A DNA stretch of 64,000 nucleotides from IMGVR_UViG_3300042868_007959:189880-253879; one strand, 5' to 3'. Shown: positions 18 to 39,846, counted from the stretch's first letter. Program-made: numbers and translations. Notes: generated by a model not told the origin, from the letters alone.

Positions 18-206
18 CTATTTAATTGCTCCGTTAAGTTCTTCATTAAATATTTTTTTTAATTCTTCTTTATATAATTGTATTTCTTCTTGTAAGATTT
101 CAATACTCTCTTTATCATTTATATTATAAATATTAAATAAATTATTAATTTCATCTAATCTATTTTTTATAATATCTATTCTTTCTTGTATTTCTAAAAC
201 TATCAT
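18..206 (-). CDS. small coiled-coil hypothetical protein
   Basis: 62-aa ORF overlapping the stop of 203..2041 by 4 nt; heptad-like I/L/E/K pattern. Confidence 0.55.
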   Translation of the reverse strand: MIVLEIQERIDIIKNRLDEINNLFNIYNINDKESIEILQEEIQLYKEELKKIFNEELNGAIK

Positions 207-2041
207 TTTTGATTTTTTAAATAATCCTCTTGTTGTTGATTTAATAAATCTATTGCATCCGATCCTTTTTTACCGTCATCTACACCAGACACTGCATCCA
301 TCTCTTCTTTATTATCAACGTATCTAACATTATCTTTTCTATTCTTTTCATCGGTAGGTGCCATTTCTATATTAGATACTTCTTTACCACTTATACTTTT
401 ATTCATTAAATCAGAAGTTTGTGTAGATAACCAATCCTTAAATTTTTTAGTTTGAAATTTAGGGTTATTTAGTAACCACTCTCTTGATTTTTTTATATCG
501 TCTTCAGTTGGTATTTCTTCACTTTTTGTCCAAGGTCTCCATCCTTTAGTATAAGCGTTATTAAGTAATGTATTATCTGTAATTGATCCATCAGAAAGAA
601 ATATTTCTTTAGTAGACTTCCAGTCATAACCATCATTTTTAATATTAGTTTGCACAGTTGGTTTAAGAGAATGTTGTACTAAATTAATTTTATCCGATAA
701 CCATTTAGCTACTTCAGGTTCACTTAAAACCTCTGATAATATAACATACATACCTAACTCTTGTAAAGCTTCTTTTCCTGCAATAGTTTTCATATACGCA
801 TTTAATGATGTAACTACATCACCATTATTTTGTAAAACTAAATTTTTAAAGTTTTTATTTTTTGAAACTGTAAGTAAGTTAGCCCTACCTACCCTACTTT
901 CTATTTTTGTTAATGCGTCACTGTAAATTTTTGCAGATTTAGGATCAATTTTAGCAAAATTATTAATTATATCGTGTCCGACTAATATCTCAGATTGATT
1001 AAGTCCGTATTTATCTGCAGTTTCTTTATAAATTTTTACTAATTTTTGATTTTTTACATCGGTTGATACATTTTTTAAAAGAGGTAATTCATTATCAACC
1101 CTTTTAATTACATCATCCGCATACTTATAAACTTTAATATTTGCACTACCTTTAGTCAATATTCTATTAGTTTGACTAACACCTCCTCCTAAAAATCCAC
1201 CAAAAAGTGTTAACCCACCAGCGAGTATAGCGGCATCTCTTTCTTCTTTTGTTTTCGCATTAAAAGCCTCGACACCATATGTAGAAGCATTCGCAAAATC
1301 TATTCCCGCACTTAACGCTAACCCAACTCCTGGTATTGCTAGTACTGCAATAGAAGCGATATCCAAAGCACAATGATAGTCACTAAAACAATCCCCAATA
1401 TACTCCCATACACTGGTAGATTTTTCATATTGATTTAAAGTTCCCTTATTGTATGAAATATCATAACTAGCAATTTTTTGTATTCTGTTTTTTATTTGAC
1501 TGTAATTATCTGACCCAAAATACTTAGTAAAAAAGTTCCACCAACCTTCAGGAAAATAAGACGACCTCCAAGCATTTTTATCATACTTAAAAGTTGCTTC
1601 TAATTCTTTTTGAATTTTTCCCCACTGAAAATAAATAGTATCATTATTTGCGATATCAGATGCTCTCTGTTTACCTATCATTTTATCCGATATTTGATCA
1701 GCCAAATCACTGAAATCTTTTGCAACATATAGTCCACCTCCCGCTGCCACATTACATGTACCTAATTCCGCTTTTGAAATACAAACATCATACATACCTT
1801 TGGTACCTGTAATTACTTTTTCAGCGATATAAACATTATTTAATTCCTTTATAGCATTTAATGCTGATTGAGCAAAAACATGATTGGCAGACAATGAACC
1901 ACCTATTAAATAATTGGGCCAACCATTACTTCTTAAAAAATTTTTAGTAGATTCAACCTCATTACTAATAGATGATTTAGTTTCTTCTTTTAAAAATATT
2001 CTTTTATATTGATTTTCCGTTATGAAAATTTTTTTTTTCAT
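203..2041 (-). CDS. putative head-packaged protein with ITE leader and pre-toxin-like hydrophobic module
   Basis: 612-aa ORF; N-terminus MKKKIFITENQYKRIFLKEE; central HCALDIASIAVLAIPGVG...IDFANASTY...AAILAGGLTLFGGFLGGG. Confidence 0.6.
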   Translation of the reverse strand: MKKKIFITENQYKRIFLKEETKSSISNEVESTKNFLRSNGWPNYLIGGSLSANHVFAQSALNAIKELNNVYIAEKVITGTKGMYDVCISKAELGTCNVAAGGGLYVAKDFSDLADQISDKMIGKQRASDIANNDTIYFQWGKIQKELEATFKYDKNAWRSSYFPEGWWNFFTKYFGSDNYSQIKNRIQKIASYDISYNKGTLNQYEKSTSVWEYIGDCFSDYHCALDIASIAVLAIPGVGLALSAGIDFANASTYGVEAFNAKTKEERDAAILAGGLTLFGGFLGGGVSQTNRILTKGSANIKVYKYADDVIKRVDNELPLLKNVSTDVKNQKLVKIYKETADKYGLNQSEILVGHDIINNFAKIDPKSAKIYSDALTKIESRVGRANLLTVSKNKNFKNLVLQNNGDVVTSLNAYMKTIAGKEALQELGMYVILSEVLSEPEVAKWLSDKINLVQHSLKPTVQTNIKNDGYDWKSTKEIFLSDGSITDNTLLNNAYTKGWRPWTKSEEIPTEDDIKKSREWLLNNPKFQTKKFKDWLSTQTSDLMNKSISGKEVSNIEMAPTDEKNRKDNVRYVDNKEEMDAVSGVDDGKKGSDAIDLLNQQQEDYLKNQK

Positions 2042-2052
2042 ATTACTATTAG

Positions 2053-3093
2053 TTATTTAACTTTTGGTTCGACTCTAAATGTACAATCATTAAGATTATT
2101 ATCTGCATCTATAATTGTAATATTATGTTCCGATGGTTTTAAATTTAATGTAGTATATACCGCATTAAGTGAATCTGATCTAAAACTAATTTTTATTTTC
2201 CCGTTTTGAGGATTTTCTTTTTTCTGCATAAAAGTATAACCTCTTTCACCATTAAATTTATATTGGTTTCCTGTAATTTTCTTTATTTTACCAATTACCC
2301 TACCTCTAGTATCTTTGACATCATATTTTTGACCTTCTACTCCTTTTGAAACTGAGGCTTCCCCACTTCTATAATCAGATATATATTTATTCTCCTCAAA
2401 TGAAGATATCATAGTCATAAGTTTTTCATTACCCTCAAATTTATTATAGAAATTAGCCATACATCTCTCTACAGTTTTATATGCATCTGGATCAAACCCA
2501 AATTCTTCTAAATCTCCAGGACCAGCCCCTTTAGACCAAGCTTTATACATTGCTTTAAGATGTTCTTTACAACTATCTATATTATTGCTAATATCTTTTC
2601 TATCTACTTTTACGTCAGTTTTAATATCTTTTTTGATACCTTTACCTTCTTTTTTGGACATAAACTGTAATTCCGCATCTTTTGTAATATAAATTTCTAC
2701 GGGTGTACCACTATCATCATTAACTCTTTTTTTAACATAATACATATCTTTACCTGGTTTTGGTCTAGATACTGTCCCTAACTTCAATTTAATGTCAACA
2801 AATGACATTCTTTTCACATAAGTCTTTCCACCAATAACTTTTTGTTCATAGAAATCTAATGAATCACTTTCACTCCCTTCTATTTCTTTTTTCTTTTCAT
2901 CTGTTAATTCAACAAATCCTTCAGGAATGTTCGGATTAGGTTTACCATCATCCTTTTTACCATCATCCTTCTTATCATCATCAACTGGTTTATCATCCTC
3001 ACCTTCTACTAAATTCCCAAACAATCTCTCTTCAGTAAATAAAGATTTCATTCTCAGTATTTGTTCATTTAAATTTAAAATATTTTTTCCCAT
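2053..3093 (-). CDS. hypothetical protein with LNEQILRMKSL leader (putative internal head protein)
   Basis: 346-aa ORF; leader motif followed by LVE and a D/K linker; ATATTTAT upstream. Confidence 0.6.
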   Translation of the reverse strand: MGKNILNLNEQILRMKSLFTEERLFGNLVEGEDDKPVDDDKKDDGKKDDGKPNPNIPEGFVELTDEKKKEIEGSESDSLDFYEQKVIGGKTYVKRMSFVDIKLKLGTVSRPKPGKDMYYVKKRVNDDSGTPVEIYITKDAELQFMSKKEGKGIKKDIKTDVKVDRKDISNNIDSCKEHLKAMYKAWSKGAGPGDLEEFGFDPDAYKTVERCMANFYNKFEGNEKLMTMISSFEENKYISDYRSGEASVSKGVEGQKYDVKDTRGRVIGKIKKITGNQYKFNGERGYTFMQKKENPQNGKIKISFRSDSLNAVYTTLNLKPSEHNITIIDADNNLNDCTFRVEPKVK

Positions 3094-3148
3094 AATTTTT
3101 CTATTATATACAATTATTCTAATAAATAAATATTAGATAAAAATAAAA

Positions 3149-3170
3149 AATCCCACCTAAAGATGGGATT
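3149..3170 (-). terminator. intrinsic terminator after tail tube gene
   Basis: AATCCCA/TGGGATT stem with an A-run on the + strand (U-tail on -). Confidence 0.6.
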
Positions 3171-3196
3171 AATTAAAATATATGTCATTCTAAAAA

Positions 3197-3685
3197 TTAG
3201 AATACACTTATTGCTCTATCAAAACGAAGTGTTGCAGTAATATCTGCCAAATCAGAAGATGAATAATCTAATGACCCAAAGTCCACATCGTTTAATTGTG
3301 TCCCTTGTAAAATCCATTTTTGAACCACTACACCTGTTGGGTCTAACATCTCTAACTCTATGTCTTTCTTATAACCTGCAGCATAACCTTGTCTACCTGT
3401 TACAGATTCAGAGTGTAAACGAACCCACTCCATTAACGCCTGAGTCGCAGAAGGACCAATAGGGTCTCTAAAAGTTACAGAGATTGATTCCCAGTTAAAT
3501 CTACCAATTACATATGTAGAAGTATTTAAAAAAGGTATCTCCACCTCTTGACTCGTATATTTTGGTCGGCTAGTTGTAGATACCCACCATTCTTGAATTC
3601 CCAATTCATCTGGAAATCTCAAAATAAACCTATTCTTTCTTAGCGGTTCGTAAGGAACAGGCATTCTCATTAATAAATCAGCCAT
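3197..3685 (-). CDS. gp19: tail tube protein (T4 gp19-like)
   Basis: 162 aa; EPLRKNRFIL, GRFNWESISVTFRD, YKKDIELEMLDPTGVVVQKWILQG, LDYSSSD, TLRFD are typical contractile-tail tube motifs. Confidence 0.9.
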   Translation of the reverse strand: MADLLMRMPVPYEPLRKNRFILRFPDELGIQEWWVSTTSRPKYTSQEVEIPFLNTSTYVIGRFNWESISVTFRDPIGPSATQALMEWVRLHSESVTGRQGYAAGYKKDIELEMLDPTGVVVQKWILQGTQLNDVDFGSLDYSSSDLADITATLRFDRAISVF

Positions 3686-3756
3686 CTTAATTTTTTTTTA
3701 ATTTTTTTTTATTAGTTGTATTATTTATTATATAAATATTGAATTTTTAGAAAAAT

Positions 3757-6753
3757 TTATTTTTCAATAATAATTCTTTTCTTTTTAGGGTTATTTGGGT
3801 CAGATGTATCATACACATTAAAATGTATCTCTGGATATTTCACACTCAATTCTTTCCTTATTAAATTTTCAATAATCTCTATATTACTTAAATCGTCATC
3901 ACTATAACCAACACTAATACCCTCAAAATCAGGGTTATCCTTTATTTCTTCAATTTGTTCTATAACTCTTTCCACAAAACTCCTAAACGCAATTTCTTTT
4001 CCTTTTTCGGGATTTGTACTTGATATATCTAAACCAAAACTATTTAAAAATTCTTTTGAAGATACTGGATGATAATCTTGTAATTTAAGATAATCATTTA
4101 TTGATGTGTCTTTAAGGTTACCCATCATTTTTTCTTTTTCACTATAAGAAAAGTTTTTATCTATTAATACTTTAATACCATCTATTAGTGACTGTGGTGA
4201 ATTTGATCTGGCAGTAATGATAGAGAAGTCATCTCCATTAATTAAAGCCTCTTTAAAATCATTAAAACTAGGTCCGTAACTTCTACTATCTATTGCATAT
4301 TTAACATCTCTAATAAAAGAATCGTACTCTCTAAAATCTTTAAACGCTTCTAATATGTCATTATTAATATATCTAAACTCATCACCTAATTTATGTCTAA
4401 TAGATCTAAATTGTTCGGTAGAAACTGAAACAGGTACCCAATGTAATCCACCAACTTTATATTCTAAATGAATTCTTGTTGGCATTTTTAAAATATTATC
4501 ATCCCAATCGAATGAATATGTTTTTTTGATTGATTCAGTTAAATAACTTTTTTTATATATAATAGATTCATTTTTGGGAGTTTCATTCTCATCATCGGTT
4601 AAACCACTAACAATAAATGGTAATAACGCTGGAAATCCAGCCTCAATCAACTTATAAGCTTGTCTATATAAATCCTTTTCAAGTTTTTTTGCTTGTTCAG
4701 GATAAATTTTTTTCCATTTACGTTCTAATTTACCTAGTACATCAAAAAATTCTCTTGGTATATTATTAACCCAAGCATCAACATCTTTTAACTCATTTCC
4801 TAATTTAACTTGATCAGTAACATTTTTATTTAAAAATTTATCTATAAATGTTTTAAAATAATCTTTTATTTTTTCTACACCTGTTAGATTATTAATATTT
4901 GGTTTTTCTGCACTCAACATAGTTTTATATTTTTGTAAGTCAATATCTACTAATTTCTGAGATTTATTTGTCCCCCTTAAATAATCAACTAGAAAAGTTG
5001 CAAAACCTTTATTTTTTTCTAAAGTACCTAACTCCAACAAAGTTTTAATATTTGCAGTGAATTCCGCCTCAATTTCCTTAACATGACTCCAATAACTTAA
5101 ATCACTTGCAGATTCTTTTACAATCCTCTCAATTTCGGGTGTAGTTATATTATTCTCTATATATTTTAAAAATTGTCTATCATTTAAATTTTCTGTTTTG
5201 TTTTTTATTTTTTTATAATTATCCCCAAACTCAGACCAACTATCAATTGATAATTTTAGAGATCTAATTTTAACATCGTTACCAAATAAATTTATATCAA
5301 ACTTAGTAAGTGGGATTTTCACTGTATCCTTACTTATATATTTTTCAGGTATAATTTTATTTTCTAAAGCCCATTTTTTGAATTCATGTACCCAACTGTA
5401 ATCCTTACTAGTATCTATATTTTTTTCCACCCCAAATTGACTAACCGCCTTTTCAGCAGCGTCATTATCCTCTCTTTGCCATTGGAAAAAATCTGCGTTA
5501 TCTACTTCCTCATTTTTTATGGGTGTCTTTTCTCTTTTACTTTTTAAATAATCCCAAGCCTCTTTCCCATCTACGAATTCGCTTGATTTATAAGTATTAA
5601 AACTATGATTACTTTTTTTTTGTATGACGTGTGTTAATTCATGATAAATCGTATGAAATATAGTATTTTTTAATTCTTCTAAATCTTTAGGATTTCTAGC
5701 TTTTTTTATTTCTTTTGTATTGATTATAACCCATTGACCCCAATTACCATTTATTTCATCTGCATACATTCTTACCCCTAAAGGAACATCGTATCTATAA
5801 ACATACTTTTCTTTTAATTTAGGATCTTTTAATATTTTTTCATTTTTAACCCAGTCCTTTATATACGGTTTTTTATCCCAATCAGCATTTTCAAAAGTCT
5901 TATCATATTCCTCTTTATATAGATCAAATAATTTATCATCATCAATTTTTGCATTATTAAACTGCTCAGGACCTTTATCATTTAAAGAAAATTTTACGTT
6001 ATCACCATTTATCTGTAATGTAACATAAATAGGTTCACCAGTATTTGTATCATACCCCCATTGATCCTCAAAACCATATTTTTTAAACGACGCATCTATA
6101 ATATCCCACTCATCTTTTGGAATATCAGATAATTTTAATCCAGATACTTGTTGTGGTATTTCTTTAGAATCTGTATCTAAATCTATTTTAGTATCGTCTA
6201 TATTTGATAAATTACCTTCATTATCTATAGTATAATTTTTTATCTCACCACCTTCAGTTTTTTGTACTATATTCTTACCACTTTTTTTATCTTTAACTAC
6301 AATAGTTTGTGATTTAGGTTTCGTTGGTGAGTACGTACCTTTACTTTTTTTCCATAAATCAAAAACTATCCCCCTTAAATCTCCTTCAGTTGGTAAATCA
6401 TTTATCACTTGTAAAATTAAATTATCATCTGCAGTTTTTAAGAATCCACTATCTGACCATTTTTTGAAATTAATAACTGCCTTATTTGTGTAATCCCAGT
6501 CAATTCCTGTTGATTTCCATAAAGATTTATAGTCATTTAAATGTTTACCTAGATCATCAAAACTTTTTATTTCAGTATTTAAAAAATTAGTTGCAAGTTT
6601 TGGATCAACATTCTTAATAGCCTTAGCGACTGCGGAAGAACTATCTTCTAAAGCATCCACTAATCTTCTACCAATTCCTTGTTCAGAAATTAAATTATTA
6701 TTTAAAAATTTTTTTAATTTTTTAATTTCCTTTTCTGAAAATAATTTACTCAT
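3757..6753 (-). CDS. large multidomain protein: zincin-like HExxH domain plus C-terminal HAD-like phosphatase
   Basis: 998 aa; HTIYHELTHVIQ...KEIEAE; C-terminal SFDWDDNIL, IITARS, GYSDDDLSN (HAD motifs I, II, IV). Confidence 0.65.
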   Translation of the reverse strand: MSKLFSEKEIKKLKKFLNNNLISEQGIGRRLVDALEDSSSAVAKAIKNVDPKLATNFLNTEIKSFDDLGKHLNDYKSLWKSTGIDWDYTNKAVINFKKWSDSGFLKTADDNLILQVINDLPTEGDLRGIVFDLWKKSKGTYSPTKPKSQTIVVKDKKSGKNIVQKTEGGEIKNYTIDNEGNLSNIDDTKIDLDTDSKEIPQQVSGLKLSDIPKDEWDIIDASFKKYGFEDQWGYDTNTGEPIYVTLQINGDNVKFSLNDKGPEQFNNAKIDDDKLFDLYKEEYDKTFENADWDKKPYIKDWVKNEKILKDPKLKEKYVYRYDVPLGVRMYADEINGNWGQWVIINTKEIKKARNPKDLEELKNTIFHTIYHELTHVIQKKSNHSFNTYKSSEFVDGKEAWDYLKSKREKTPIKNEEVDNADFFQWQREDNDAAEKAVSQFGVEKNIDTSKDYSWVHEFKKWALENKIIPEKYISKDTVKIPLTKFDINLFGNDVKIRSLKLSIDSWSEFGDNYKKIKNKTENLNDRQFLKYIENNITTPEIERIVKESASDLSYWSHVKEIEAEFTANIKTLLELGTLEKNKGFATFLVDYLRGTNKSQKLVDIDLQKYKTMLSAEKPNINNLTGVEKIKDYFKTFIDKFLNKNVTDQVKLGNELKDVDAWVNNIPREFFDVLGKLERKWKKIYPEQAKKLEKDLYRQAYKLIEAGFPALLPFIVSGLTDDENETPKNESIIYKKSYLTESIKKTYSFDWDDNILKMPTRIHLEYKVGGLHWVPVSVSTEQFRSIRHKLGDEFRYINNDILEAFKDFREYDSFIRDVKYAIDSRSYGPSFNDFKEALINGDDFSIITARSNSPQSLIDGIKVLIDKNFSYSEKEKMMGNLKDTSINDYLKLQDYHPVSSKEFLNSFGLDISSTNPEKGKEIAFRSFVERVIEQIEEIKDNPDFEGISVGYSDDDLSNIEIIENLIRKELSVKYPEIHFNVYDTSDPNNPKKKRIIIEK

Positions 6754-6777
6754 ACTAATAAATATTGTGGTTAATTA

Positions 6778-6803
6778 AAAAACCCAATCTAAGATGGGTT
6801 TTT
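6778..6803. terminator. hairpin, probable bidirectional terminator
   Basis: AAAAACCCA..TGGGTTTTT. Confidence 0.6.
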
Positions 6804-6830
6804 ATTAATGAAAAATAAATACACATAAAT

Positions 6831-6861
6831 TTTGTATATTCAAAAAATAATTATATATTTG
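6831..6861 (+). promoter_or_regulatory. Bacteroidota primary-sigma type promoter (-33/-7)
   Basis: TTTG-N19-TATATTTG, 15 nt before ATG 6877. Confidence 0.7.
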
Positions 6862-6876
6862 TTTAAAATAACTGAT

Positions 6877-7218
6877 ATGTGTAAAATTAAAAAAGAAGCC
6901 GAACAATATAAAGATTCGTCAACATCTAAATTAAAAAGGGTTATTATTAATTATAAATTTCTATCCTTCTCTAATACAAAAAATTTTAATTTTGTAATTA
7001 CACTACTTTTTATTTTGATACCATTTTTTTTAATGTCAAAAATAACTGTTTTTACATTATCATTAGTTATTGTTTCACATTATTTCATTTTCTGTAAATA
7101 TCTTTATGAAAAGAAAAAATGGAAAATGGTTAGTGATGAAGAAAAAAATGAAATAGATGAAATCATTATAATATTAGAATCTTACTTAGAAGATAGAAAA
7201 AACAAAAAACCCCTATAA
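6877..7218 (+). CDS. small two-TM membrane protein
   Basis: hydrophobic FVITLLFILIPFFLM and ITVFTLSLVIVSHYFIF; start moved to ATG 6877 because the track's TTG start lies inside the promoter. Confidence 0.7.
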   Translation: MCKIKKEAEQYKDSSTSKLKRVIINYKFLSFSNTKNFNFVITLLFILIPFFLMSKITVFTLSLVIVSHYFIFCKYLYEKKKWKMVSDEEKNEIDEIIIILESYLEDRKNKKPL

Positions 7219-7230
7219 TAAGGGGTTTTT
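7205..7230. terminator. bidirectional intrinsic terminator
   Basis: AAAAACCCCT-ATAATA-AGGGGTTTTT between convergent genes. Confidence 0.75.
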
Positions 7231-7242
7231 ATATTTTATTAA

Positions 7243-7833
7243 TTATCTTCCTGTTCTTCCGTATTGTCTTGATCTTCCTTTGAAAGCCAATGCTAATCCT
7301 GCTGCAACCATAGCCAACGATATTGGTCCACCATAATTTCCTGCTCCAGCCATTTCTACGAAATCATGAATTTTTGTAGTCAACTCAAATTCTGACCAAC
7401 CAGTTATATTTCCAAGTGCAGTGATTGCTCCCGATAAAGCTAAACCAGCTCCACCACCCATCATTGCTTTCTCACCGAATGCAGCATTTCTACCACCCAT
7501 TCTTCTTGGTGTGTCTTCATTTTCTCTAATTCTTCTTTCAGACATACGACCAGAATTTGGTTCATTTACCTTTCTTTCTAACATTCTAGATTCCTCTGGT
7601 GTTAATTCGGGTAAAATTTCTTCTTTAAAGAAGTCTGAAATTAAATCAACAACTTCACTTTTAGATAATTCACCACCTTCTAAATCATTAAGATCATCAT
7701 TAGAATATTTCGATAAATTTAAATTACCGTATGTTGGGTGAACATCATCCATTCCACCCATATCCTCTTTAATAACTCTTTTGACTATTCTTCTTAAATC
7801 AGTCTCAGTTAATCTTACTATTCTTTTTGCCAT
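7243..7833 (-). CDS. putative head-packaged protein with LTE leader and C-terminal Gly-rich hydrophobic hairpin
   Basis: MAKRIVRLTETDLRRIVKRVIKE; GGGAGLALSGAITALG and GPISLAMVAAGLALAF. Confidence 0.65.
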   Translation of the reverse strand: MAKRIVRLTETDLRRIVKRVIKEDMGGMDDVHPTYGNLNLSKYSNDDLNDLEGGELSKSEVVDLISDFFKEEILPELTPEESRMLERKVNEPNSGRMSERRIRENEDTPRRMGGRNAAFGEKAMMGGGAGLALSGAITALGNITGWSEFELTTKIHDFVEMAGAGNYGGPISLAMVAAGLALAFKGRSRQYGRTGR

Positions 7834-7857
7834 TTTGTAAAATATTTTTTATTTTTA

Positions 7858-8142
7858 TTAGGATTGTACTCCTGAATTTTGTTTGTCTTTAAGACAATTT
7901 AGTGCTGCAATAGCTTTCATACCTTCACCCATAGGATCCTTAAGTATTATTCCCCCAATTTCCTTAACACATTTAGTATAATCTCCTGTTGTACAAGACA
8001 TAGGTGCTTTAATACCTGCATCCTCACAACATTTCACTAAATCTTCTTTTGGATCTGATTCTTCCTTCAAAAGTTTGTTTACGATTCTCTTCATATCTGA
8101 TTCAGACAAAGTTATCGTTTTACCGTTTTTTCTAATTTTCAT
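7858..8142 (-). CDS. small Cys-containing protein with LSE leader
   Basis: MKIRKNGKTITLSESDMKRIVNKLLKEE; 5 Cys in the remainder. Confidence 0.65.
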   Translation of the reverse strand: MKIRKNGKTITLSESDMKRIVNKLLKEESDPKEDLVKCCEDAGIKAPMSCTTGDYTKCVKEIGGIILKDPMGEGMKAIAALNCLKDKQNSGVQS

Positions 8143-8194
8143 CTTTTTTGTTTTTAAAATTGTTAAAAGGGGTTATTACACCCCATATTTATTA

Positions 8195-11075: not shown

Positions 11076-11222
11076 ATTTCTTTAATTATAAATATGCGGT
11101 TTTTTATGAAAAAATATTTTTTGAGTTTGATAAAATAAATTTAGTATGAATTTTATCATACTTTTGTCATACTTATATATAAAAAGGAAATGAAGAGGGA
11201 TAAAAATTTAAAAATCACGCCT
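11076..11222. repeat. direct repeat copy 1 (late motif + operator + 5' end of RHH gene)
   Basis: identical to 13399..13534 except for an 11-bp extra TTTGTCATACT. Confidence 0.9.
11143..11173. promoter_or_regulatory. palindromic operator candidate with extra half-site
   Basis: AGTATGA-ATTTTA-TCATACT-TTTG-TCATACT just upstream of the RHH ORF. Confidence 0.55.
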
Positions 11223-32557: not shown

Positions 32558-32616
32558 AACTTTATTTTTAAATAAATATTTAGAATTGTGTTATATTTAT
32601 ATAAAAAAGATTTATT

Positions 32617-33456
32617 ATGAATAAAACATTTAAAAAGTCCGATATTAATACGTATTTAGGTAAAAAAAATGTTCTGAGGGAGAATGAGTTAAATGAATTA
32701 ATAGGTACCAATGGGGCATTAATTAATCCTAGTAATAGCTACAAACAAAATAGAAATTTTATAAAATCTAAAAAAACTACTGATGATTATGTTAGAAGTT
32801 CTACTCAAGGACCTGAGGCATACTTTATATATGGTGGACCATATTATGGTATCAATTACGCATATATTGTTAATGAAGAAGAAAATATTTTAGATAGTGA
32901 TACTGAAGAAATCTATGATGAGTTGGATGTTGTACCATCTAAAAAATATAGTAGAGACGATAAAGAAAGAAAGTATAGGGAAGCCAAAAAAATGGCGGAT
33001 AAAGATATAAGTTCACATTATTTCAGACAATCTGATCCTGTATATGATCATTTACCATCAGATGAGTGGAGAAATTATAAATTACCTAATGACACTAAAT
33101 TTGATTTTGATATTACAGAAAATGAAGATTCTATGAAATCATTGGTTGATGAGATAATTAGAAACAAAAAAGATACTACTAGAGATTTTGTTAAAAAAAT
33201 GAAAGAGTCTGATATTATAGTAGGGATGGATAAAATAGCAGACATTAGCGAATTAAAAGATGTACATGAAAAACCAATGGTTATAAGAAAAATAAATAGT
33301 CTATTGGATTTAATACATAAAGAAAATCTAAAAGGTGATGAGTTGGGAATATTATTGAACCACTTAATTGATAATTTAGATATTTATAGTATGAAAGAAG
33401 AACATAGAGAAATAATTGGTGATAAAATAAAGTATGGCGAGCAGGAAGGAAAATAA
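32617..33456 (+). CDS. hypothetical late protein
   Basis: 279-aa ORF; ATATTTATA at 32593; several LxE/VNE sites. Confidence 0.6.
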   Translation: MNKTFKKSDINTYLGKKNVLRENELNELIGTNGALINPSNSYKQNRNFIKSKKTTDDYVRSSTQGPEAYFIYGGPYYGINYAYIVNEEENILDSDTEEIYDELDVVPSKKYSRDDKERKYREAKKMADKDISSHYFRQSDPVYDHLPSDEWRNYKLPNDTKFDFDITENEDSMKSLVDEIIRNKKDTTRDFVKKMKESDIIVGMDKIADISELKDVHEKPMVIRKINSLLDLIHKENLKGDELGILLNHLIDNLDIYSMKEEHREIIGDKIKYGEQEGK

Positions 33457-33982
33457 AGGTGGTAATAGTAAGTTACATGGGAAATATTATAATTGCCCAA
33501 ATTATGTACTTAATGCAGTTACCAATGCCGTAAAAACTTATGAAACTTTAAAAAAGGAAGATATCAGTAATAATAAAGCTACTGAAGGATATAAAAGAGC
33601 TAAAGGTATTCTAGAAAATAAAAAAATAGAATATAAACAAATGAAAAGGATAAAAAACTGGTTCGATAATTATGATGGTAAACATGAGGATATCGAATAT
33701 AGACTTAATGGTGGTAAAACAATGCACAATTGGGTAGACTCAACTCTTAATAAAGAAACACAGTCTATTAAAGCACCTAAAAAAATAAAAAGTGAAACAG
33801 GTTTGTCAAATCAATTTATTAAACAACACGAAAAAGATACTACTAAAGTTAATAGACAAACATTGAAGATAAAATTACCTAAACTTAGTAAAGATATAAG
33901 TGGACAATTATCGAGAGGAAAACCTGTTTATGAAGAAATTTTAAGAATACAAAAATTAATAATATATGAATCTAAAATATAA
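33434..33982 (+). CDS. hypothetical phage protein
   Basis: 182 aa; GYKRA..I......KRIKNWF...LNGG...NW; C-terminal VYEEILRIQKLI leader-like motif. Confidence 0.6.
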   Translation: MASRKENKGGNSKLHGKYYNCPNYVLNAVTNAVKTYETLKKEDISNNKATEGYKRAKGILENKKIEYKQMKRIKNWFDNYDGKHEDIEYRLNGGKTMHNWVDSTLNKETQSIKAPKKIKSETGLSNQFIKQHEKDTTKVNRQTLKIKLPKLSKDISGQLSRGKPVYEEILRIQKLIIYESKI

Positions 33983-33987
33983 AAACT

Positions 33988-34332: not shown

Positions 34333-34340
34333 TATATAAA

Positions 34341-34709: not shown

Positions 34710-34711
34710 AA

Positions 34712-35290
34712 ATGAGTAATGCAGAAAGATTAAAAGAAATTTTAAGTAGATCAAAAGCGGTTATGCAAATTACGGAGCAAAACCACGGATCAACTTCTAA
34801 TGGAAGTCAAAGTAATGAATATAGTAGTGAAGAAAAAGAAATACCTAATTTAACTGAAAATTTTATTAGGGAAAACCAAAGAACCTCTTCTTCCTCAGTA
34901 GCCCCAGTAAATGGTAAATATAGAAACATAAATAAATCTAAAATGCCTGAAGCAATTAAAAGGGCGATGATAGATAATCCAATAGATATTCCAGAATCAC
35001 CATACCATACATTTGAGTTAGAAGATGTTCCTGAGTTATTGGTGAATGAACAAAGAACTAATAACCAACCTAAAAAAACTAACAAAGTTTCTAATGTAAA
35101 TGAAACTGTTAAAAGTACTATTAACGAAAGTACAATAAGAAAAATAGTTAGAGAAGAAATAGAGAGTGTAGTTAGAACAGTGGTAGAAGAATATTTTGAT
35201 AAATCACTAGTTACTGAAGATATACAAATCAAAGTAGGACAAACTATATTTTCAGGTAAATTAAAACCGTTACCATCTAAAAGAAAATAA
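34712..35290 (+). CDS. hypothetical protein
   Basis: 192 aa; SKMPEAIKRAMIDNPI; INESTIRKIVREEI. Confidence 0.65.
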   Translation: MSNAERLKEILSRSKAVMQITEQNHGSTSNGSQSNEYSSEEKEIPNLTENFIRENQRTSSSSVAPVNGKYRNINKSKMPEAIKRAMIDNPIDIPESPYHTFELEDVPELLVNEQRTNNQPKKTNKVSNVNETVKSTINESTIRKIVREEIESVVRTVVEEYFDKSLVTEDIQIKVGQTIFSGKLKPLPSKRK

Positions 35291-35314
35291 TAAAACCCTC
35301 ATTAGAGGGTTTTA
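35291..35314. terminator. bidirectional intrinsic terminator
   Basis: TAAAACCCTC-ATTA-GAGGGTTTTA between convergent genes. Confidence 0.8.
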
Positions 35315-35322
35315 TTTTATAT

Positions 35323-35892: not shown

Positions 35893-35907
35893 TTAGTTTT
35901 GATATTG

Positions 35908-35938
35908 TAAAGATACAATAATTATTTTAATATACAAA
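35908..35938 (-). promoter_or_regulatory. Bacteroidota-type promoter
   Basis: TTTG-N19-TATCTTTA (one mismatch to TAnnTTTG). Confidence 0.55.
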
Positions 35939-35980
35939 TTTTTTATCATTTTTTTATATTTATAGGAAAACTAATTTTTT

Positions 35981-37774
35981 ATGTCAAAAACTAATTTAAC
36001 TGAAGAACTAAGAAGAATGAAAAACTTAATGGTGTATAATAATGGACAATATAATAATCCATTAAGGGAGGCAGTTGATACAACTACCCTACCATCGTTT
36101 AGTGAAAAGGTGGATTTCGGAGGAGGATGGTATACATTAGATGGAGAATATAAAGGGACAACTTGGAACATTCCTGATGATTTGAAGGATGAGTTGTCGT
36201 CAGTTAAAGAATTTTTATTAAAAAATCCATCTGGGTATATTGTTGACGTAAGAATAGATTCGGGTGAATCAAAAATACCTAATGTGGATGCGACAGGTAA
36301 AAAAGGAACTTATCCTAGTAACAAAGTACCACCTAAATATCTATCTAATGAACGAATGAAAACAATTAAAGATTATGTTACAAGCGTTTTTGATACTTGG
36401 GTTGAAGAAGGTGTTATAAAAGATAAATTAAATATTGTTACAACAGAACCAGTTATTGGGGGAACTAAATGGGTTGGTCAGGAATTTTGTCCAGAAGATA
36501 AAAGAGCTGGTGATCCTGAGGGATATAAATGTACAACCGCATTTAATGATGGATTGGCTAAGGGTAAATATGCCGATTTTAAGAAAGCGTATATTGAGGA
36601 GCAGTATGTTGAGGTAGTAATTAAAGTTAATAAAATTGAGGGTGAAGAAGAGACGCCAAAAGAGGTAACAGGTAAAGATCCATTAGAATGTGCAACAAAT
36701 TTAAAAATACGAATTTGGGTTGCGTCACACGACTGTCAAAATGCCGAATTTTTTGTTTATGCAAATAATACCCCATTAAAAAATACAGTGGGGGGAATGA
36801 CTGCAAATTTAAATAATAGTAGTGTTGATAGAGGGGTACCTAGAACAAACTCACAACCAACATTTCAGTCGGAATTCTTAAATCCAGGATATGGATATTT
36901 ACCAAATGGAGATGGTACGTATGGTTATAAATACGGTTCAATAAATAAAGAAGGAAATTTAAGGGGGGGTAGATCCGATACATTTATTTTAAGCGAACAA
37001 CAAGTTAAAGATATAATCAATGAAAATCAAAATAAAAATAGTAAATCAATAATCTCTTTATGGATGATAGCCACTACAAGTAATGCACATAAGGATATCC
37101 CTCAAGTGACAATAACTTTGGGTGACGAAGTTATTTACGACAAAGCCCCTAAAATTACTAAAGGAAAACTATTATCTTTTGATGTTTGTACAAAGAAAGT
37201 AACTGAAAGTAGTGATACTCAAGAACCTGATTTAGGGGCACAAATTAATAAAATAGTTAGGGAAAAAAGAGAATTACAGGAAAAAAATATTACATCTGGT
37301 AAAGTCACAAAGAAAAAACAAATGAAATTAGATCAAAAAGGTGTAGTCTTAGAAAGATCCGAAATTCTAGTAGATAAAATTACATCTTTATTATCTTTTC
37401 TATCTAAAAATATAACATCTACAACAGAGGTAAGTGATGACGTTAAAAAAAGACTATCAGATGATTTTATTGAGATGCAGAAAGAATTAAAAGGAGATAT
37501 AGAATCGGGAATACCATCATTAGAGGCAACTTGGGATGGTGAAAAATTAACATTTGTAGATAAAACTATTAGAAATAGTGATTTATATGGTGATATAAGA
37601 ATGGATATTACTAAATTTTATAAAGGATTTATCTTAGCGTATTATAGATTTAAAAAATTCAACCCAAAAGGGATACCGACTGAATCGGATTGGGCGGGTA
37701 ATGTAGATGGTAAAAAACTTTTAGAAAGAATGAAAGTACCTAAAATATCACAAGAATTTGGATTAACGGTATAA
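35981..37774 (+). CDS. leader-bearing protein with OmpA-C-like domain (paralog A)
   Basis: MSKTNLTEELRRMKNLM; IDSGESKIPN...LSNERMKTIKDYV...EQYVEV. Confidence 0.55.
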   Translation: MSKTNLTEELRRMKNLMVYNNGQYNNPLREAVDTTTLPSFSEKVDFGGGWYTLDGEYKGTTWNIPDDLKDELSSVKEFLLKNPSGYIVDVRIDSGESKIPNVDATGKKGTYPSNKVPPKYLSNERMKTIKDYVTSVFDTWVEEGVIKDKLNIVTTEPVIGGTKWVGQEFCPEDKRAGDPEGYKCTTAFNDGLAKGKYADFKKAYIEEQYVEVVIKVNKIEGEEETPKEVTGKDPLECATNLKIRIWVASHDCQNAEFFVYANNTPLKNTVGGMTANLNNSSVDRGVPRTNSQPTFQSEFLNPGYGYLPNGDGTYGYKYGSINKEGNLRGGRSDTFILSEQQVKDIINENQNKNSKSIISLWMIATTSNAHKDIPQVTITLGDEVIYDKAPKITKGKLLSFDVCTKKVTESSDTQEPDLGAQINKIVREKRELQEKNITSGKVTKKKQMKLDQKGVVLERSEILVDKITSLLSFLSKNITSTTEVSDDVKKRLSDDFIEMQKELKGDIESGIPSLEATWDGEKLTFVDKTIRNSDLYGDIRMDITKFYKGFILAYYRFKKFNPKGIPTESDWAGNVDGKKLLERMKVPKISQEFGLTV

Positions 37775-37788
37775 TAAATTAATAAATT

Positions 37789-39846
37789 ATGAAAAAAAAC
37801 AATTTAACAGAAGAATTAAATAGGATAAAGAATCTAATGGTTTACAATAATGGAGACTATAGAAATCCTATATATGAATTTGAGTTATTAAATGAAGCCC
37901 CTACTGATGAAGTAAAAGAAGTTTCTTTACAAGCCAATTTTAAATCAGGTAGATGGAAAGATACATCGTTACCAAAAACAGAAATTTTGGCTGAACTTAA
38001 AGAAGCAATAGATTGGCTAAAACAAAAATCTAAAGAAATAAAAGATAGTGGTGGTATAATAGGTGGACAAGCAAAAATTTTAACAGTTCAAATAGAAGCT
38101 GGAGAATCACAAGTAACCAATTACGATGCTGAAGTAGATCCTAAAGTCAAATTAGAAGAAAAAGTTTTATCTGAAAGAAGGGCTAAGACTATACAAACTT
38201 TCTTAACTAATTACTTTAAAAAATTACAAAAAGATAAGACTATTGATGCAATACCTGTATTTGAGGCACCTGTAGTTAAAATTGGTCCAACACCTTGGAA
38301 TCCTAAAGGAGGTGATGAAGCGACAGATAAAAAATTTACTAAAGAACAATATATAAAAGTTAATTTTAAATTAACTCCACCTTCAGCTTGTTTGGAGGGA
38401 TTAGTTATTGAGGTTATGTATGTAAAAGAACCGAATCCTTCATTTCCATGTAGAGGAGGACACCAATGTGACGACGCATTATTTGATGTTTATTTGAATG
38501 AGACTAAATTAGATGGGGTAGCTAACTTAAATAATGCCGAAGATGGTGGAAGTAGAAGTTCTAAATTTGTAGTTTCACCACAACAAGCGTTATCGATATT
38601 AGGTAATAAACCAGGAAACATTATGATATCTTTTGTATGTAAAAACAAAGATAAAAGATGTCACTCAAGTACACCTGAGATTAGATTAAGTAAAGGTGGT
38701 ACAGTTGTATATCACGAATGTACACCCTCAATCAGTGAAACTAATGATTATTCTAAAATAGATGTGATGGAATTAGATGCGTGTGGTAATTTAATTAAAA
38801 AGGGTCAAGAAAAGAAAACTGCACAAAAAGATGAATCTTTAATGAAACCACCTGCAGGTATCAAAAAAGGGTGGGTGGTTTACGACATTGCAACTAAATT
38901 ACCTGTTTTTAAAGATACTTCGGCTTCTACAGATTTACAAGAAAATATTTACAAAAAATACTTACCATTATACGGTTATAATTTTGGTGGTTACGAACCT
39001 GAGATTTATAAAGGTAATTGTAATGAAGCAAAAATTTACGGTGGATGGTGTTTGTGGTCAGGTATAAAAATTAATTATGTAAATGATCAATTTTGTGGTG
39101 GAGCTGAATCGGGTTCGTCATATAAATTAGGTTCAGAAAGTACGGTTAATACTAATTTAGGTAAAAGTATAACTAATAGTATGAGGAATTATATGTTAGA
39201 TAATTGTGATAGTTCTACTATGGGAGTAGAATTGGGTGACATAATAACAGTTAAAAAAGATGATATACCAAAACAATTTAATTTTAAAAGATTATATTCT
39301 CCATTAGGAGTTTATTCTAACCCAAAAATTGTCGGTAATGCATCTACACCATTTAAATTAGTTCCAAATGAAAAACCTAATGGTATAAATTTCACACCTA
39401 AATTATTTACAGATTTTGTTAATAATATATATGGCACAGAACAAACCACAATAAAAACTCAAAACCTAATCAATTTAATCACAACCACTACTGTTTCTGA
39501 TTTAAGTGATTCGACAAATGCAATATCATTCTTCATCACCACTACAGATGAAACTTTTGGATCTACAACATTTCCTAATTCAACAAAAATCGATTCGTAT
39601 GTTAGTAAATATAATACATTTAAAAATGAAAAATTAACGGGAAGTGTTGTAGTTGGTGGATTTAAAGAAATACAAAATACATTTCTTAGTTTAAGTGTTA
39701 TCAGAAAATATGAAAAGGGTATTTTTAAAAACAATACTTTACGTGTTATGTTATATGGAAATCAACCATATTCATCAGTTGCGCAAAAATTGATATCTTT
39801 AGGATTGATTAAAGAAAAAAGTGGTAAATTAGTTTTATCTAAATAA
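37789..39846 (+). CDS. leader-bearing protein with OmpA-C-like domain (paralog B)
   Basis: MKKNNLTEELNRIKNLM; FKSG, IEAGESQVTN...LSERRAKTIQTFL...EQYIKV. Confidence 0.55.
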   Translation: MKKNNLTEELNRIKNLMVYNNGDYRNPIYEFELLNEAPTDEVKEVSLQANFKSGRWKDTSLPKTEILAELKEAIDWLKQKSKEIKDSGGIIGGQAKILTVQIEAGESQVTNYDAEVDPKVKLEEKVLSERRAKTIQTFLTNYFKKLQKDKTIDAIPVFEAPVVKIGPTPWNPKGGDEATDKKFTKEQYIKVNFKLTPPSACLEGLVIEVMYVKEPNPSFPCRGGHQCDDALFDVYLNETKLDGVANLNNAEDGGSRSSKFVVSPQQALSILGNKPGNIMISFVCKNKDKRCHSSTPEIRLSKGGTVVYHECTPSISETNDYSKIDVMELDACGNLIKKGQEKKTAQKDESLMKPPAGIKKGWVVYDIATKLPVFKDTSASTDLQENIYKKYLPLYGYNFGGYEPEIYKGNCNEAKIYGGWCLWSGIKINYVNDQFCGGAESGSSYKLGSESTVNTNLGKSITNSMRNYMLDNCDSSTMGVELGDIITVKKDDIPKQFNFKRLYSPLGVYSNPKIVGNASTPFKLVPNEKPNGINFTPKLFTDFVNNIYGTEQTTIKTQNLINLITTTTVSDLSDSTNAISFFITTTDETFGSTTFPNSTKIDSYVSKYNTFKNEKLTGSVVVGGFKEIQNTFLSLSVIRKYEKGIFKNNTLRVMLYGNQPYSSVAQKLISLGLIKEKSGKLVLSK

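What the first reader, a model, noticed from the sequence alone, without database searches (positions are those of the whole stretch)
203..39846. Shared protease-cleavable leader on unrelated late proteins: candidate capsid-targeting and payload-delivery system
Seen: otherwise unrelated ORFs begin with a similar short amphipathic motif, followed by a second [ILMV]xE. Examples: 203..2041 IFITENQYKRIFLKEE; 2053..3093 LNLNEQILRMKSLF...LVE; 3757..6753 LFSEKEIKKLKKFL...LISEQ; 7243..7833 VRLTETDLRRIVKRVIKE; 7858..8142 ITLSESDMKRIVNKLLKEE; 35981 NLTEELRRMKNLM...LRE; 37789 NLTEELNRIKNLM...LLNE. Similar motifs are C-terminal or internal in 33434..33982 (VYEEILRIQKLI), 34712..35290 (INESTIRKIVREE) and the scaffold end (LNES...ITAIKDLMRRI). 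Weaker cases are 20549 (IIKES), 34341 (LILE) and 58083 (VILES). Most are under the ATATTTAT motif. Known: T4 gp21 cleaves after L/I-x-E, and T4 internal proteins use a short cleaved capsid-targeting sequence; here the capsid (LLNE-S) and scaffold carry the same sites. Inference: this is a modular address tag, mimicking the scaffold tail, that loads a large and exchangeable set of effectors into the head for injection at infection.
Basis: partly seen in the sequence, partly recalled or inferred. Interest (0 to 1): 0.85.

Follow-up and report, generated by a model that had tools for sequence, protein, structure and literature searches.

The report
Shared leader tags on phage proteins
An uncultured 254-kb T4-like phage, and hundreds of its relatives, put one of a few short conserved leader peptides ending in the T4 head-protease cleavage motif on the front of many unrelated late proteins; this most likely marks them for loading into the capsid and release there, a much expanded version of the T4 capsid targeting sequence, but nothing has been tested at the bench.

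Summary
The core observation is real and stronger than stated. Seven window ORFs (203, 2053, 3757, 7243, 7858, 35981, 37789) start with one of four conserved leader classes. Each leader is 19-36 aa long and has an L/I-x-E near its start and another at the leader/body junction. Profiles built from relatives hit only these seven N-termini in the six-frame window.

In 80 related loci, 205 of 791 ORFs carry a leader on about 44 unrelated bodies. The class-2 leader alone marks 399 protein clusters among 1.84 billion representatives, almost always at residue 1. Leaders are swapped between homologous bodies, recombination breakpoints fall at leader ends, and conservation acts on the peptide.

The phage has a gp21-type (S77) protease, a gp23-type capsid protein with an invariant L-[LI]-x-E propeptide end, an acidic scaffold and a gp55-like late sigma factor. 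In a sister subclade, leader genes lie between the protease and scaffold genes.

Best reading (about 0.6): cleavable capsid-targeting tags, that is, T4 CTS logic without sequence similarity. "Mimics the scaffold tail" is not supported. Packaging, cleavage and injection are all inferred. I call it a new variant of a known kind.

The parts
7858..8142 (-). Class-1 leader protein, 94 aa. Leader = residues 1-27 (nt 8062-8142), with L-S-E at residue 14 and L-K-E at residue 27.
   Evidence: HMM i-E 2.5e-22 at the ORF start. No Pfam or PHROG family. Follows the sheath gene on the same strand.
7243..7833 (-). Class-1 leader protein, 196 aa. Leader = residues 1-23 (nt 7765-7833), with L-T-E at residue 10 and I-K-E at residue 23. 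The body ends in a hydrophobic segment and a basic tail.
   Evidence: HMM i-E 3e-13. Shares only the leader with 7858 (blastp residues 4-31 vs 8-35). A terminator-like hairpin at 7205-7230 follows it.
3757..6753 (-). Class-4 leader protein, 998 aa. Leader = residues 1-24 (nt 6682-6753), ending in I-S-E followed by Q-G-I-G-R-R. The C-terminal ~270 aa (nt 3760-4575) may be a HAD-like domain.
   Evidence: HMM i-E 1.4e-22. ATATTTAT lies 4 nt upstream. The body N-domain is 56% identical to a class-2-led protein in L040, starting at the junction. HAD-like matches in the ESM Atlas have TM-by-row 0.69-0.88. Pfam is silent and the AF2 model is poor.
2053..3093 (-). Class-2 leader protein, 346 aa. Leader = residues 1-30 (nt 3004-3093), with L-N-E at residue 10 and L-V-E at residue 30, followed by an acidic linker.
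   Evidence: HMM i-E 6.5e-20. ATATTTAT lies 32 nt upstream, after the tube-gene terminator.
203..2041 (-). Class-3 leader protein, 612 aa. Leader = residues 1-19 (nt 1985-2041), with I-T-E at residue 9 and L-K-E at residue 19.
   Evidence: HMM i-E 3.3e-18. In a phage whose sheath is 99% identical (L002), DNA homology stops 58 nt into this gene and the body there is an unrelated 1199-aa protein. The AF2 model is mostly helical with low confidence.
35981..37774 (+). Class-2-variant leader protein, 597 aa. Leader = residues 1-30 (nt 35981-36070), with L-T-E at residue 8 and L-R-E at residue 30.
   Evidence: HMM i-E 8.5e-4. ATATTTAT lies 17 nt upstream. In L164 the flanking genes are near-identical and the first 24 residues are identical, but the body is only 36% identical.
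37789..39846 (+). Class-2-variant leader protein, 685 aa, paralog of 35981. Leader = residues 1-30 or 1-36 (nt 37789-37896), with L-T-E at residue 8, I-Y-E at residue 30 and L-N-E at residue 36.
   Evidence: HMM i-E 1.5e-3. Paralogy with 35981 at 2e-24.
62200..62889 (-). Prohead protease of the T4 gp21 family, the presumed processing enzyme.
   Evidence: Pfam Peptidase_S77 3.9e-23. PDB 5JBL (T4 gp21) 5.5e-18, with His and Ser at the two aligned positions where the crystallised chain has Ala. A conserved N-terminal L-[IV]-E is present in orthologs.
60795..62102 (-). Scaffold-like acidic protein between the protease and capsid genes, the presumed docking partner.
   Evidence: Gene position. Net charge -68. 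[LI]xE observed/expected 1.33 across orthologs. Conserved L-N-E-S-T site before the C-terminal tail. No similarity of the tail to the leaders.
59005..60762 (-). Major capsid protein of gp23 type. The putative propeptide is residues 1-60 (nt 60583-60762) and ends in L-L-N-E.
   Evidence: Pfam Gp23 1.8e-71. L-[LI]-x-E is invariant in about 60 distinct orthologs and is followed by a variable-length linker. [LI]xE observed/expected is 2.3 in the first 65 aa and 1.0 in the rest.
51843..52577 (+). Late sigma factor (gp55-like) that would drive the ATATTTAT units.
   Evidence: phrog_234 late sigma transcription factor, 3.7e-5.
11088..11095 (-). ATATTTAT candidate late promoter heading the sheath-7858-7243 unit. 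Sister copies lie at 6758-6765(-), 3126-3133(-) and 35956-35963(+).
   Evidence: 24 of 38 copies lie in the 5.3% of the window that is intergenic, and 22 lie within 80 nt upstream of a same-strand start.
58083..58919 (-). Possible short (11-aa) leader ending in I-L-E on the gene just after the capsid gene. Uncertain.
   Evidence: The N-terminus M-R-I-K-K-K-x-[VIL]-L-L-E is conserved in 17 orthologs. In sister clades the same slot holds genes with the short fifth leader class. It is not a hit of any leader HMM.

Best explanation
The leaders are cleavable capsid-targeting propeptides. Late in infection the tagged proteins are made together with the head and tail proteins. The basic N-terminal leader, probably helical, docks them onto the very acidic scaffolding core (or the inner shell) while the prohead forms. 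The gp21-type serine protease then cuts after the L/I-x-E at the leader/body junction, and probably also after the upstream L/I-x-E. This frees the mature cargo inside the head and lets the small leader fragments escape. The cargo would leave with the DNA at infection.

The tag is short and self-contained, so any gene recombined behind it becomes a packaged protein. That explains the fast cassette turnover.

Shown here: the tags exist, they are N-terminal, they are modular, they are selected as peptides, they end in L/I-x-E, they sit in late-type units, and they co-occur with a T4-type head module.

Inferred: docking partner, cleavage, packaging, ejection and effector function.
For: 1. N-terminal exclusivity.
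- All seven window hits are at ORF starts.
- 205 tagged ORFs in 80 loci. Apart from eight ORFs with a mis-called start or a fused relic, all have the leader at the ORF start.
- 399 class-2 clusters among 1.84e9 representatives, nearly all starting at residue 1, with lengths of 31-962 aa.

2. Modularity.
- About 44 body clusters.
- The same body (73% identical) has a class-1 leader in some phages and a class-2 leader in others, with homology starting at L-x-E-G.
- Class 4 vs class 2 on the 3757 family.
- DNA homology between near-identical phages ends 58-59 nt into two leader genes.
- The leader is identical while the body is 36% identical in L164.

3. Peptide-level selection.
- Third-codon-position mismatches are about twice second-position mismatches.
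- The leader is more conserved than the body in every family.

4. Cleavage logic.
- Information content collapses right after G-N-L-V-E.
- [LI]xE ends within 5 aa of the anchor in 92 of 134 proteins (expected 3.8%) and within 20 aa in 118 of 134 (expected 17%).
- S77 protease with catalytic His and Ser.
- Invariant L-[LI]-x-E at the capsid propeptide end.
- [LI]xE is enriched in the scaffold (1.33) and the capsid propeptide (2.3), and mildly depleted in cargo bodies (0.84-0.93, against 1.11 in untagged ORFs).

5. Head-module synteny.
- In a sister subclade, class-1 and short class-5 leader genes lie between the protease and scaffold genes and just after the capsid gene. This is the region where T4 has core genes gp67 and gp68 (the T4 gene order is from my own knowledge).

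6. Late context.
- ATATTTAT units and a gp55-like sigma factor.
- No tags in the glycosyltransferase/dUTPase/PhoH block.

7. Precedent.
- T4 internal proteins and Alt carry 10-20-aa CTS propeptides cut by gp21 after L/I-x-E. The CTS alone packages foreign proteins (PMC9026906, PMC5694885).
Against: - There is no experimental datum of any kind: no virion proteome and no cultured member of the clade.
- In this phage the tagged genes sit between and after the sheath and tube genes, not in the head module.
- The leaders have no sequence similarity to the T4 CTS and are 2-3 times longer.
- The first L/I-x-E is part of the conserved motif, so its 'enrichment' is not independent of the profile.
- Some of the downstream second sites belong to one body family.
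- Amphipathicity is not significant.
- The sequences used for the statistics are related to each other.
- Cargo functions are almost all unknown, and both AF2 models were poor.
Confidence: 0.6

Rival explanations
1. The tag is a tail-loading signal. It directs cargo into the tail tube lumen or onto the baseplate or tail tip, as the N-terminal signal peptides of eCIS/PVC payloads do, and is not necessarily cleaved.
For: In this phage and in most of the 80 loci, the tagged genes lie directly between the sheath and tube genes and right after the tube gene, on the same strand. Some cargo carries peptidoglycan-binding domains, as tail-associated lysins do. PVC payloads use N-terminal signals to enter the tube (PMC11495950).
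Against: - No Pvc15-like AAA ATPase appears among the window proteins scanned.
- In the sister subclade the tagged genes lie in the head module.
- The junction motif matches the head protease and the capsid propeptide site.
- T4 also places its sheath and tube genes next to its head genes (own knowledge).
- A phage tube must hold the tape measure and pass DNA.
- Cargo lengths of 60-1200 aa and nine tagged genes per genome are hard to fit in a tube.
Confidence: 0.12
2. The tag is a non-packaging handle: a shared helix for oligomerisation, chaperone binding or membrane association of late accessory proteins. The L/I-x-E pattern would then be a by-product of helix composition.
For: The leaders are basic, helix-prone and rich in L, I, K, R and E, so x-E after L/I is compositionally likely. 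Some cargo has MORN or peptidoglycan-binding domains that act at the envelope. One body ends in a hydrophobic segment.
Against: - Conservation drops sharply exactly after the junction Glu.
- When the leader is swapped, homology starts at L-x-E.
- Where the first junction site has Asp, Gly or Lys, an [LIV]-x-E usually follows within 9-17 residues.
- The scaffold and the capsid propeptide are enriched in the same motif, while cargo bodies are mildly depleted.
- No hydrophobic signal sequence is present.
Confidence: 0.15
3. The conserved leader is mainly a DNA-level recombination or translation-start cassette, or simply a relic of common ancestry of one expanded gene family. The peptide itself would have no address function.
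For: Recombination breakpoints coincide with the leader. A 'solo' leader followed by a stop codon exists. T4-type genomes are known to shuffle modules at short conserved cassettes (PMC2839356).
Against: - About a quarter of leader codons differ synonymously between different body families, and the third position varies most.
- Conservation does not extend into a shared 5' UTR: three leader genes have the promoter motif and four have none.
- The bodies are unrelated by blastp and Pfam.
- The leader is more conserved than the body in every family.
Confidence: 0.05

Closest known systems
Capsid targeting sequence (CTS) of phage T4 internal proteins IPI, IPII, IPIII and of Alt, processed by prohead protease gp21
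   Same: - An N-terminal tag on otherwise unrelated proteins.
- A gp21-family (S77) protease and a gp23-type capsid protein in the same genome.
- The tag ends in L/I-x-E.
- The tagged genes are variable between close relatives.
- The small class-1 proteins (94 and 196 aa) fall in the size range of the T4 IPs (95, 100 and 193 aa).
   Different: - No sequence similarity: the leader HMMs score about 2 bits or less on the T4 IP and Alt N-termini.
- The leaders are 19-36 aa, against about 10 aa for the T4 IPII/IPIII CTS.
- There are at least four classes in this genome and a fifth in relatives, not one.
- There are two L/I-x-E sites per leader.
- Cargo reaches about 1200 aa, with hundreds of families (399 clusters for one class).
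- At least nine tagged genes lie in 67 kb.
- The genes cluster around the sheath and tube genes.
- Packaging and cleavage are untested here.
N-terminal propeptides of inner-body and ejection proteins of giant phages phiKZ, 201phi2-1 and SPN3US
   Same: Jumbo genomes. A diverged gp21-like protease cuts after Glu. Many head-internal proteins are ejected into the host. Propeptides are thought to target proteins into the prohead. Some paralogs share an identical N-terminal 15 aa (PMC5694885).
   Different: Their propeptides are mostly longer than 100 aa and protein-specific, not a short tag shared by unrelated proteins. Their motif is S/A/G-x-E or A-x-E, not L/I-x-E. They have a different capsid lineage and no identified gp22-like scaffold.
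N-terminal signal peptides of eCIS / Photorhabdus virulence cassette payloads
   Same: Short N-terminal tags make diverse, exchangeable payloads load into a contractile injection machine. The payload genes are clustered next to the sheath/tube operon (PMC11495950, PMC10097599).
   Different: Their cargo goes into the tube lumen with the help of an AAA ATPase, and no protease step is involved. Here there is no such ATPase in the window. There is a head protease and a matching cleavage motif at the junction.
Encapsulin cargo-loading peptides (comparison from my own knowledge, not tested here)
   Same: A short conserved peptide on unrelated cargo proteins directs them to the interior of an HK97-fold shell.
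   Different: They are usually C-terminal, they bind the shell protein directly, they are not cleaved, and the compartment neither holds DNA nor ejects anything.

Membership tests
T4-type capsid targeting sequence / gp21-processed head-internal proteins | The tag is at the N-terminus of otherwise unrelated proteins | tested here: met
   All significant hits are at ORF starts, on about 44 body clusters. 399 clusters carry the class-2 leader.
T4-type capsid targeting sequence / gp21-processed head-internal proteins | The genome encodes a gp21-family (Peptidase_S77) prohead protease with catalytic His and Ser, plus a gp23-type capsid protein | tested here: met
   Pfam S77 3.9e-23 and Gp23 1.8e-71. 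Alignment to T4 gp21 structure 5JBL at 5.5e-18.
T4-type capsid targeting sequence / gp21-processed head-internal proteins | The tag ends in the gp21 cleavage motif L/I-x-E | tested here: met
   This is met at the sequence level only.
T4-type capsid targeting sequence / gp21-processed head-internal proteins | Sequence similarity to the T4 CTS | tested here: not met
   I fetched the T4 IPI, IPII, IPIII and Alt N-termini from NC_000866. The leader HMMs give about 2 bits or less, and none of those matches is at the N-terminus. A 10-aa tag cannot establish or exclude homology.
T4-type capsid targeting sequence / gp21-processed head-internal proteins | The tag is removed by the protease in the prohead | not testable with these tools
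   This needs N-terminomics or an in vitro cleavage assay.
T4-type capsid targeting sequence / gp21-processed head-internal proteins | The protein is present in the head, and the tag is sufficient to package a foreign protein | not testable with these tools
   No cultured member of the clade is available. No leader match was found in 50,697 GenBank phage records.
T4-type capsid targeting sequence / gp21-processed head-internal proteins | Late expression together with head genes | tested here: inconclusive
   All seven genes lie in units headed by ATATTTAT, which also precedes the scaffold, protease, sheath and tube genes. A gp55-like sigma factor is present. No transcript data exist.
Giant-phage (phiKZ/SPN3US) ejection-protein propeptides | Long (over 100 aa) protein-specific propeptides cut at S/A/G-x-E or A-x-E | tested here: not met
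   The leaders are 19-36 aa, shared between unrelated proteins, and have L/I at P3. The family definition is taken from PMC5694885.
eCIS/PVC payload signal peptides | A dedicated AAA ATPase loader (Pvc15-like) encoded with the machine | tested here: not met
   No AAA ATPase family appeared among the window proteins scanned with Pfam or PHROGs. The other 190 kb of the contig was not seen.
eCIS/PVC payload signal peptides | Payload genes clustered next to the sheath and tube genes | tested here: met

The most novel reading that the evidence does not exclude
The four or five leader classes form an address code. Each class would specify a different docking site, copy number or ejection order inside a jumbo T4-like head. 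The tags would then work like a 'signal peptide for injection', so that the whole injected effector repertoire of an uncultured, widespread phage clade could be read directly from metagenomes. That repertoire would run to hundreds of ORFan families and include envelope-active and enzyme-like cargo.
Probability: 0.2. Interest if true: 0.85.

Novelty: new variant of a known kind. Interest (0 to 1): 0.62.

Why it matters
If the tags do load proteins into the head, four things follow.

1. They give a sequence-only way to list the proteins that a large, uncultured clade of about 250-kb T4-like phages injects. The clade has more than 300 sheath relatives and more than 580 capsid relatives in IMG/VR. 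Injected proteins are the class that in T4 includes anti-restriction and host-takeover factors.
2. They show that the CTS principle, known from a 10-aa tag in T-even phages, has been scaled up into a multi-class tagging system with very fast cargo turnover.
3. They offer new, portable packaging tags for engineering.
4. They explain why so many ORFans cluster around the sheath and tube genes in these genomes.

If the tags do something else, they are still one of the most widely shared short modules in these genomes and need an explanation.

Tried and rejected
- Pfam and PHROGs on the seven proteins found no family.
- tblastn of two cargo proteins and of the class-1 and class-2 leaders against 50,697 GenBank phages found nothing useful.
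- The search for homologous proteins on the leader region returned only close orthologs, all unnamed.
- A strict degenerate DNA pattern for one leader core gave only 34 IMG/VR hits and no new copy in this contig beyond the gene already known.
- I tested the scaffold-tail mimicry with leader HMMs on 78 scaffold orthologs and rejected it: maximum 2.8 bits, median negative.
- Helical hydrophobic moment against shuffles was not significant, so I do not call the leaders amphipathic with confidence.
- AlphaFold2 of 203..2041 gave pLDDT 58.8. AlphaFold2 of the 3757 C-terminal domain gave pLDDT 52.7. Both are too poor for a fold search, so I ran none.
- The HAD-like lead for 3757 therefore rests on ESM Atlas structure matches and on my reading of D-x-D, T-A-R-S and D-D-D motifs. 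Pfam does not see it.
- The apparent class-3/class-2 'swap' in body cluster 1 turned out to be a single-linkage artefact: a shared 86-aa domain, not a leader swap.
- I considered a tape-measure role for the post-tube genes and rejected it, because lengths range from about 190 to 1200 aa among close relatives.
- A secretion signal is rejected because there is no hydrophobic core.

Full report
**What the window is.** The window is the last 64 kb of a 253,879-bp IMG/VR contig. GC content is about 29%.

Genes identified in the window:
- A gp23-type major capsid protein at 59005..60762 (Pfam Gp23 1.8e-71).
- A gp21-type prohead protease at 62200..62889 (Peptidase_S77 3.9e-23; PDB 5JBL 5.5e-18). It has His and Ser at the two positions where the crystallised T4 chain has Ala. 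From my own knowledge these are the catalytic residues.
- A very acidic scaffold-like protein between the two (net charge -68).
- A tail sheath at 8195..11044 and a tail tube at 3197..3685.
- Fibre-like proteins, a DNA polymerase and a helicase.
- A gp55-like late sigma factor at 51843..52577.
- A non-structural block at 40188..51835 holding glycosyltransferases, a dUTPase, a methyltransferase, a SET-domain protein and PhoH.

The nearest cultured relatives are distant. Flavobacterium phage immuto has a capsid protein 43% identical over the C-terminal 41% of the protein. IMG/VR holds at least 328 sheath relatives and at least 588 capsid relatives.

**The observation.** In 80 loci fetched with the sheath protein, a regex pass and then HMMs showed that 205 of 791 ORFs start with one of four leader classes. 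All 205 are on the sheath strand.

| Class | Start | Helical core | End |
|---|---|---|---|
| 1 | M-K-I-K-K-N-G-K-V-I-x-L-[TS]-E-S-D-L-[KR]-R-I-V | within the start | V-[IL]-K-E |
| 2 | [LI]-N-E-E-I-x-R-[IM]-K-S-L-F-T-E-E-R-L-[YF]-G-N-L-V-E | within the start | as shown |
| 3 | I-[TS]-E-x-Q-Y-[KR]-R-[VI]-F-L-x-E | within the start | as shown |
| 4 | L-F-S-E-K-E-I-K-K-L-K | within the start | L-x-[ST]-E-Q |

Eight apparent exceptions in the loci resolve as follows:
- Five are mis-called start codons.
- Three are copies of one ORF that ends in a 'solo' leader followed at once by a stop codon.

Two further tagged genes lie just outside the window start. This genome therefore has at least nine tagged genes in about 67 kb.

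**Breadth.** I searched a 36-position profile of the class-2 leader against 1.84 billion representative proteins.
- It found 399 proteins at E <= 1e-3 and 220 at E <= 1e-10.
- In the 150 listed, the match almost always starts at residue 1.
- Protein lengths run from 31 to 962 aa.
- Of 114 of these scanned with Pfam, only about 17 carry any domain: PG_binding_1 in 9, MORN in 6, PG_binding_3 in 6.

No leader match exists in 50,697 GenBank phage records. All homologs in the large protein collection are unnamed. I found no paper describing this system in six full-text searches.

**Modularity.** After the leader is removed, the 205 proteins fall into about 44 blastp clusters.

Two clean leader swaps exist:
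- A 113-aa body that is 73% identical carries a class-1 leader in four phages and a class-2 leader in three. Homology begins at L-[DN]-E-G.
- The N-domain of the 3757 family follows a class-4 leader in the window. It follows a class-2 leader in L040, and also in a paralog in this same genome. Homology begins at L-x-[ST]-E-Q-G-I-G-R-R.

Between phages whose sheath genes are 99% identical, DNA homology stops 59 nt into the class-4 gene and 58 nt into the class-3 gene. The bodies beyond those points are unrelated. In L164 the neighbours of 35981 are near-identical and the first 24 residues are identical, yet the body is 36% identical.

Leader codons differ synonymously in about a quarter of positions between different body families, and third positions vary about twice as much as second positions. 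In every family the leader is more conserved than the body. The unit under selection is therefore a peptide.

**Why a protease-cleaved head address is the best reading.** T4 gp21 cuts after L/I-x-E. T4 internal proteins and Alt enter the prohead core through 10-20-aa N-terminal CTS propeptides, which gp21 removes. The CTS alone packages foreign proteins (PMC9026906, PMC5694885, PMC3012670).

Here:
- Every leader class ends in [LIV]-x-E and has another such site near its start.
- Information content in class 2 stays at 3-4.3 bits up to the junction and falls below 1 bit within three residues after it.
- [LI]xE ends within 5 aa of the G-N anchor in 92 of 134 representatives (expected 3.8%) and within 20 aa in 118 of 134 (expected 17%). 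Leaders whose first junction site has Asp, Gly or Lys usually carry an [LIV]-x-E 9-17 residues further on.
- The capsid protein has an invariant L-[LI]-x-E at about residue 60, followed by a variable-length linker and then the conserved core.
- Protease orthologs conserve an N-terminal L-[IV]-E.
- [LI]xE observed/expected is 2.3 in the capsid propeptide, 1.33 in scaffolds, 1.11 in untagged ORFs, and 0.84-0.93 in cargo bodies.
- In a sister subclade, class-1 genes and genes with a fifth, 10-11-aa leader (M-x-x-L-I-K-K-[IL]-L-[KR]-E) sit between the protease and scaffold genes and just after the capsid gene.
- The leaders are mostly basic (+2 to +5) and the scaffold is strongly acidic. Docking by charge is my inference.
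- All seven genes lie in same-strand units headed by ATATTTAT. This motif is concentrated in intergenic DNA: 24 of 38 copies lie in 5.3% of the sequence. It also precedes the sheath, tube, scaffold and protease genes. None of the roughly 20 metabolic or early-type genes carries a leader.

**What is not supported, and the caveats.**
- Leader profiles do not resemble the scaffold C-terminal tail.
- There is no similarity to the T4 CTS.
- In this phage the tagged genes flank the sheath and tube genes, so a tail-lumen loading signal of the eCIS type (PMC11495950) is a real rival. Against it: no AAA loader in the window, the head-module synteny in the sister clade, and the junction motif.
- The statistics use related sequences, and partly use motifs that define the profiles.
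- Cargo function is almost unknown. The 3757 C-terminus matches HAD-like folds in the ESM Atlas and shows D-x-D, T-A-R-S and D-D-D motifs. Pfam and AF2 give no confirmation.
- The model of 203..2041 is helical but of low confidence.

**Verdict.** The best-supported mechanism is a cleavable capsid-targeting tag, at confidence about 0.6. It works like the T4 CTS but is not demonstrably homologous to it, and it is far more elaborate: several classes, longer tags, two sites per tag, large cargo, and hundreds of families. I rate it a new variant of a known kind.

Noticed in passing
window 51843-52577 (+) and 38 ATATTTAT sites, e.g. 11088-11095(-), 62162-62169(-), 62910-62917(-): A gp55-like late sigma factor is present. 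ATATTTAT in sense orientation is concentrated upstream of structural genes: 24 of 38 copies are intergenic and 22 lie within 80 nt of a same-strand start. It is a candidate late promoter and differs from T4's TATAAATA.
   Followed up: partly
window 6832-7218 (+): A 128-aa TTG-start ORF with long hydrophobic stretches lies antisense in the 490-nt gap between two leader genes. It is bounded by a bidirectional hairpin at 7205-7230. It could be a small membrane protein or a decayed cassette.
   Followed up: no
window 39847-40065 (-): A 72-aa lipoprotein-like ORF (signal sequence plus Cys) sits right after the 37789 gene on the opposite strand. It has a weak internal class-3-like motif (i-E 0.084).
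   Followed up: no
window 27413-32557 (-): A 1714-aa fibre- or appendage-like protein (phrog_25468, pre-neck appendage hits) contains a stretch at about 28-30 kb with GC 0.43, against about 0.29 elsewhere.
   Followed up: no
window 40188-51835 (+): A block of at least four family-2 glycosyltransferases, a dUTPase, a methyltransferase, a SET-domain protein and PhoH. It has no ATATTTAT motif upstream of any of its genes and no leaders. It may be a DNA or surface glycosylation module.
   Followed up: partly
L104, L110, L124, L145, L154 (sister subclade), e.g. L145:977-1779 and L110:5854-7808: A fifth, very short leader class (M-x-x-L-I-K-K-[IL]-L-[KR]-E, 10-11 aa) occurs on genes between the protease and scaffold genes and after the capsid gene. 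30 of 78 regex hits start within the first 11 residues.
   Followed up: partly
L032:10569-11744, also L033 and L062: A 391-aa ORF ends in a complete class-1 leader followed immediately by a stop codon. It looks like a relic of a deletion at the leader/body junction.
   Followed up: no
L161 (Flavobacterium phage immuto, NC_055915) 3922-4386, 5435-6193, 15602-15823: This cultured distant relative has leader-like N-termini, for example one ending in R-R-M-Q-K-L-A-G-I-I-T-E, near its terminase, portal and protease genes. One of them occurs twice in the genome. It is a possible experimental model.
   Followed up: partly
P0002 and P0003 (class-2 representatives): Some proteins carry two class-2 leaders in tandem, the second starting at residue 38 or 104.
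   Followed up: no
L169:745-2913 and L169:2924-3607 (same contig, just beyond the window start): Two more tagged genes belong to this phage. One is a 722-aa class-2 protein whose body N-domain is a paralog of the window's class-4 protein 3757. The other is a 227-aa Cys-rich protein with a short class-2 leader.
   Followed up: yes
L162:533-1408: A DUF559/HNH-like gene is inserted directly after the tube gene in one relative, ahead of four tagged genes in a row.
   Followed up: no
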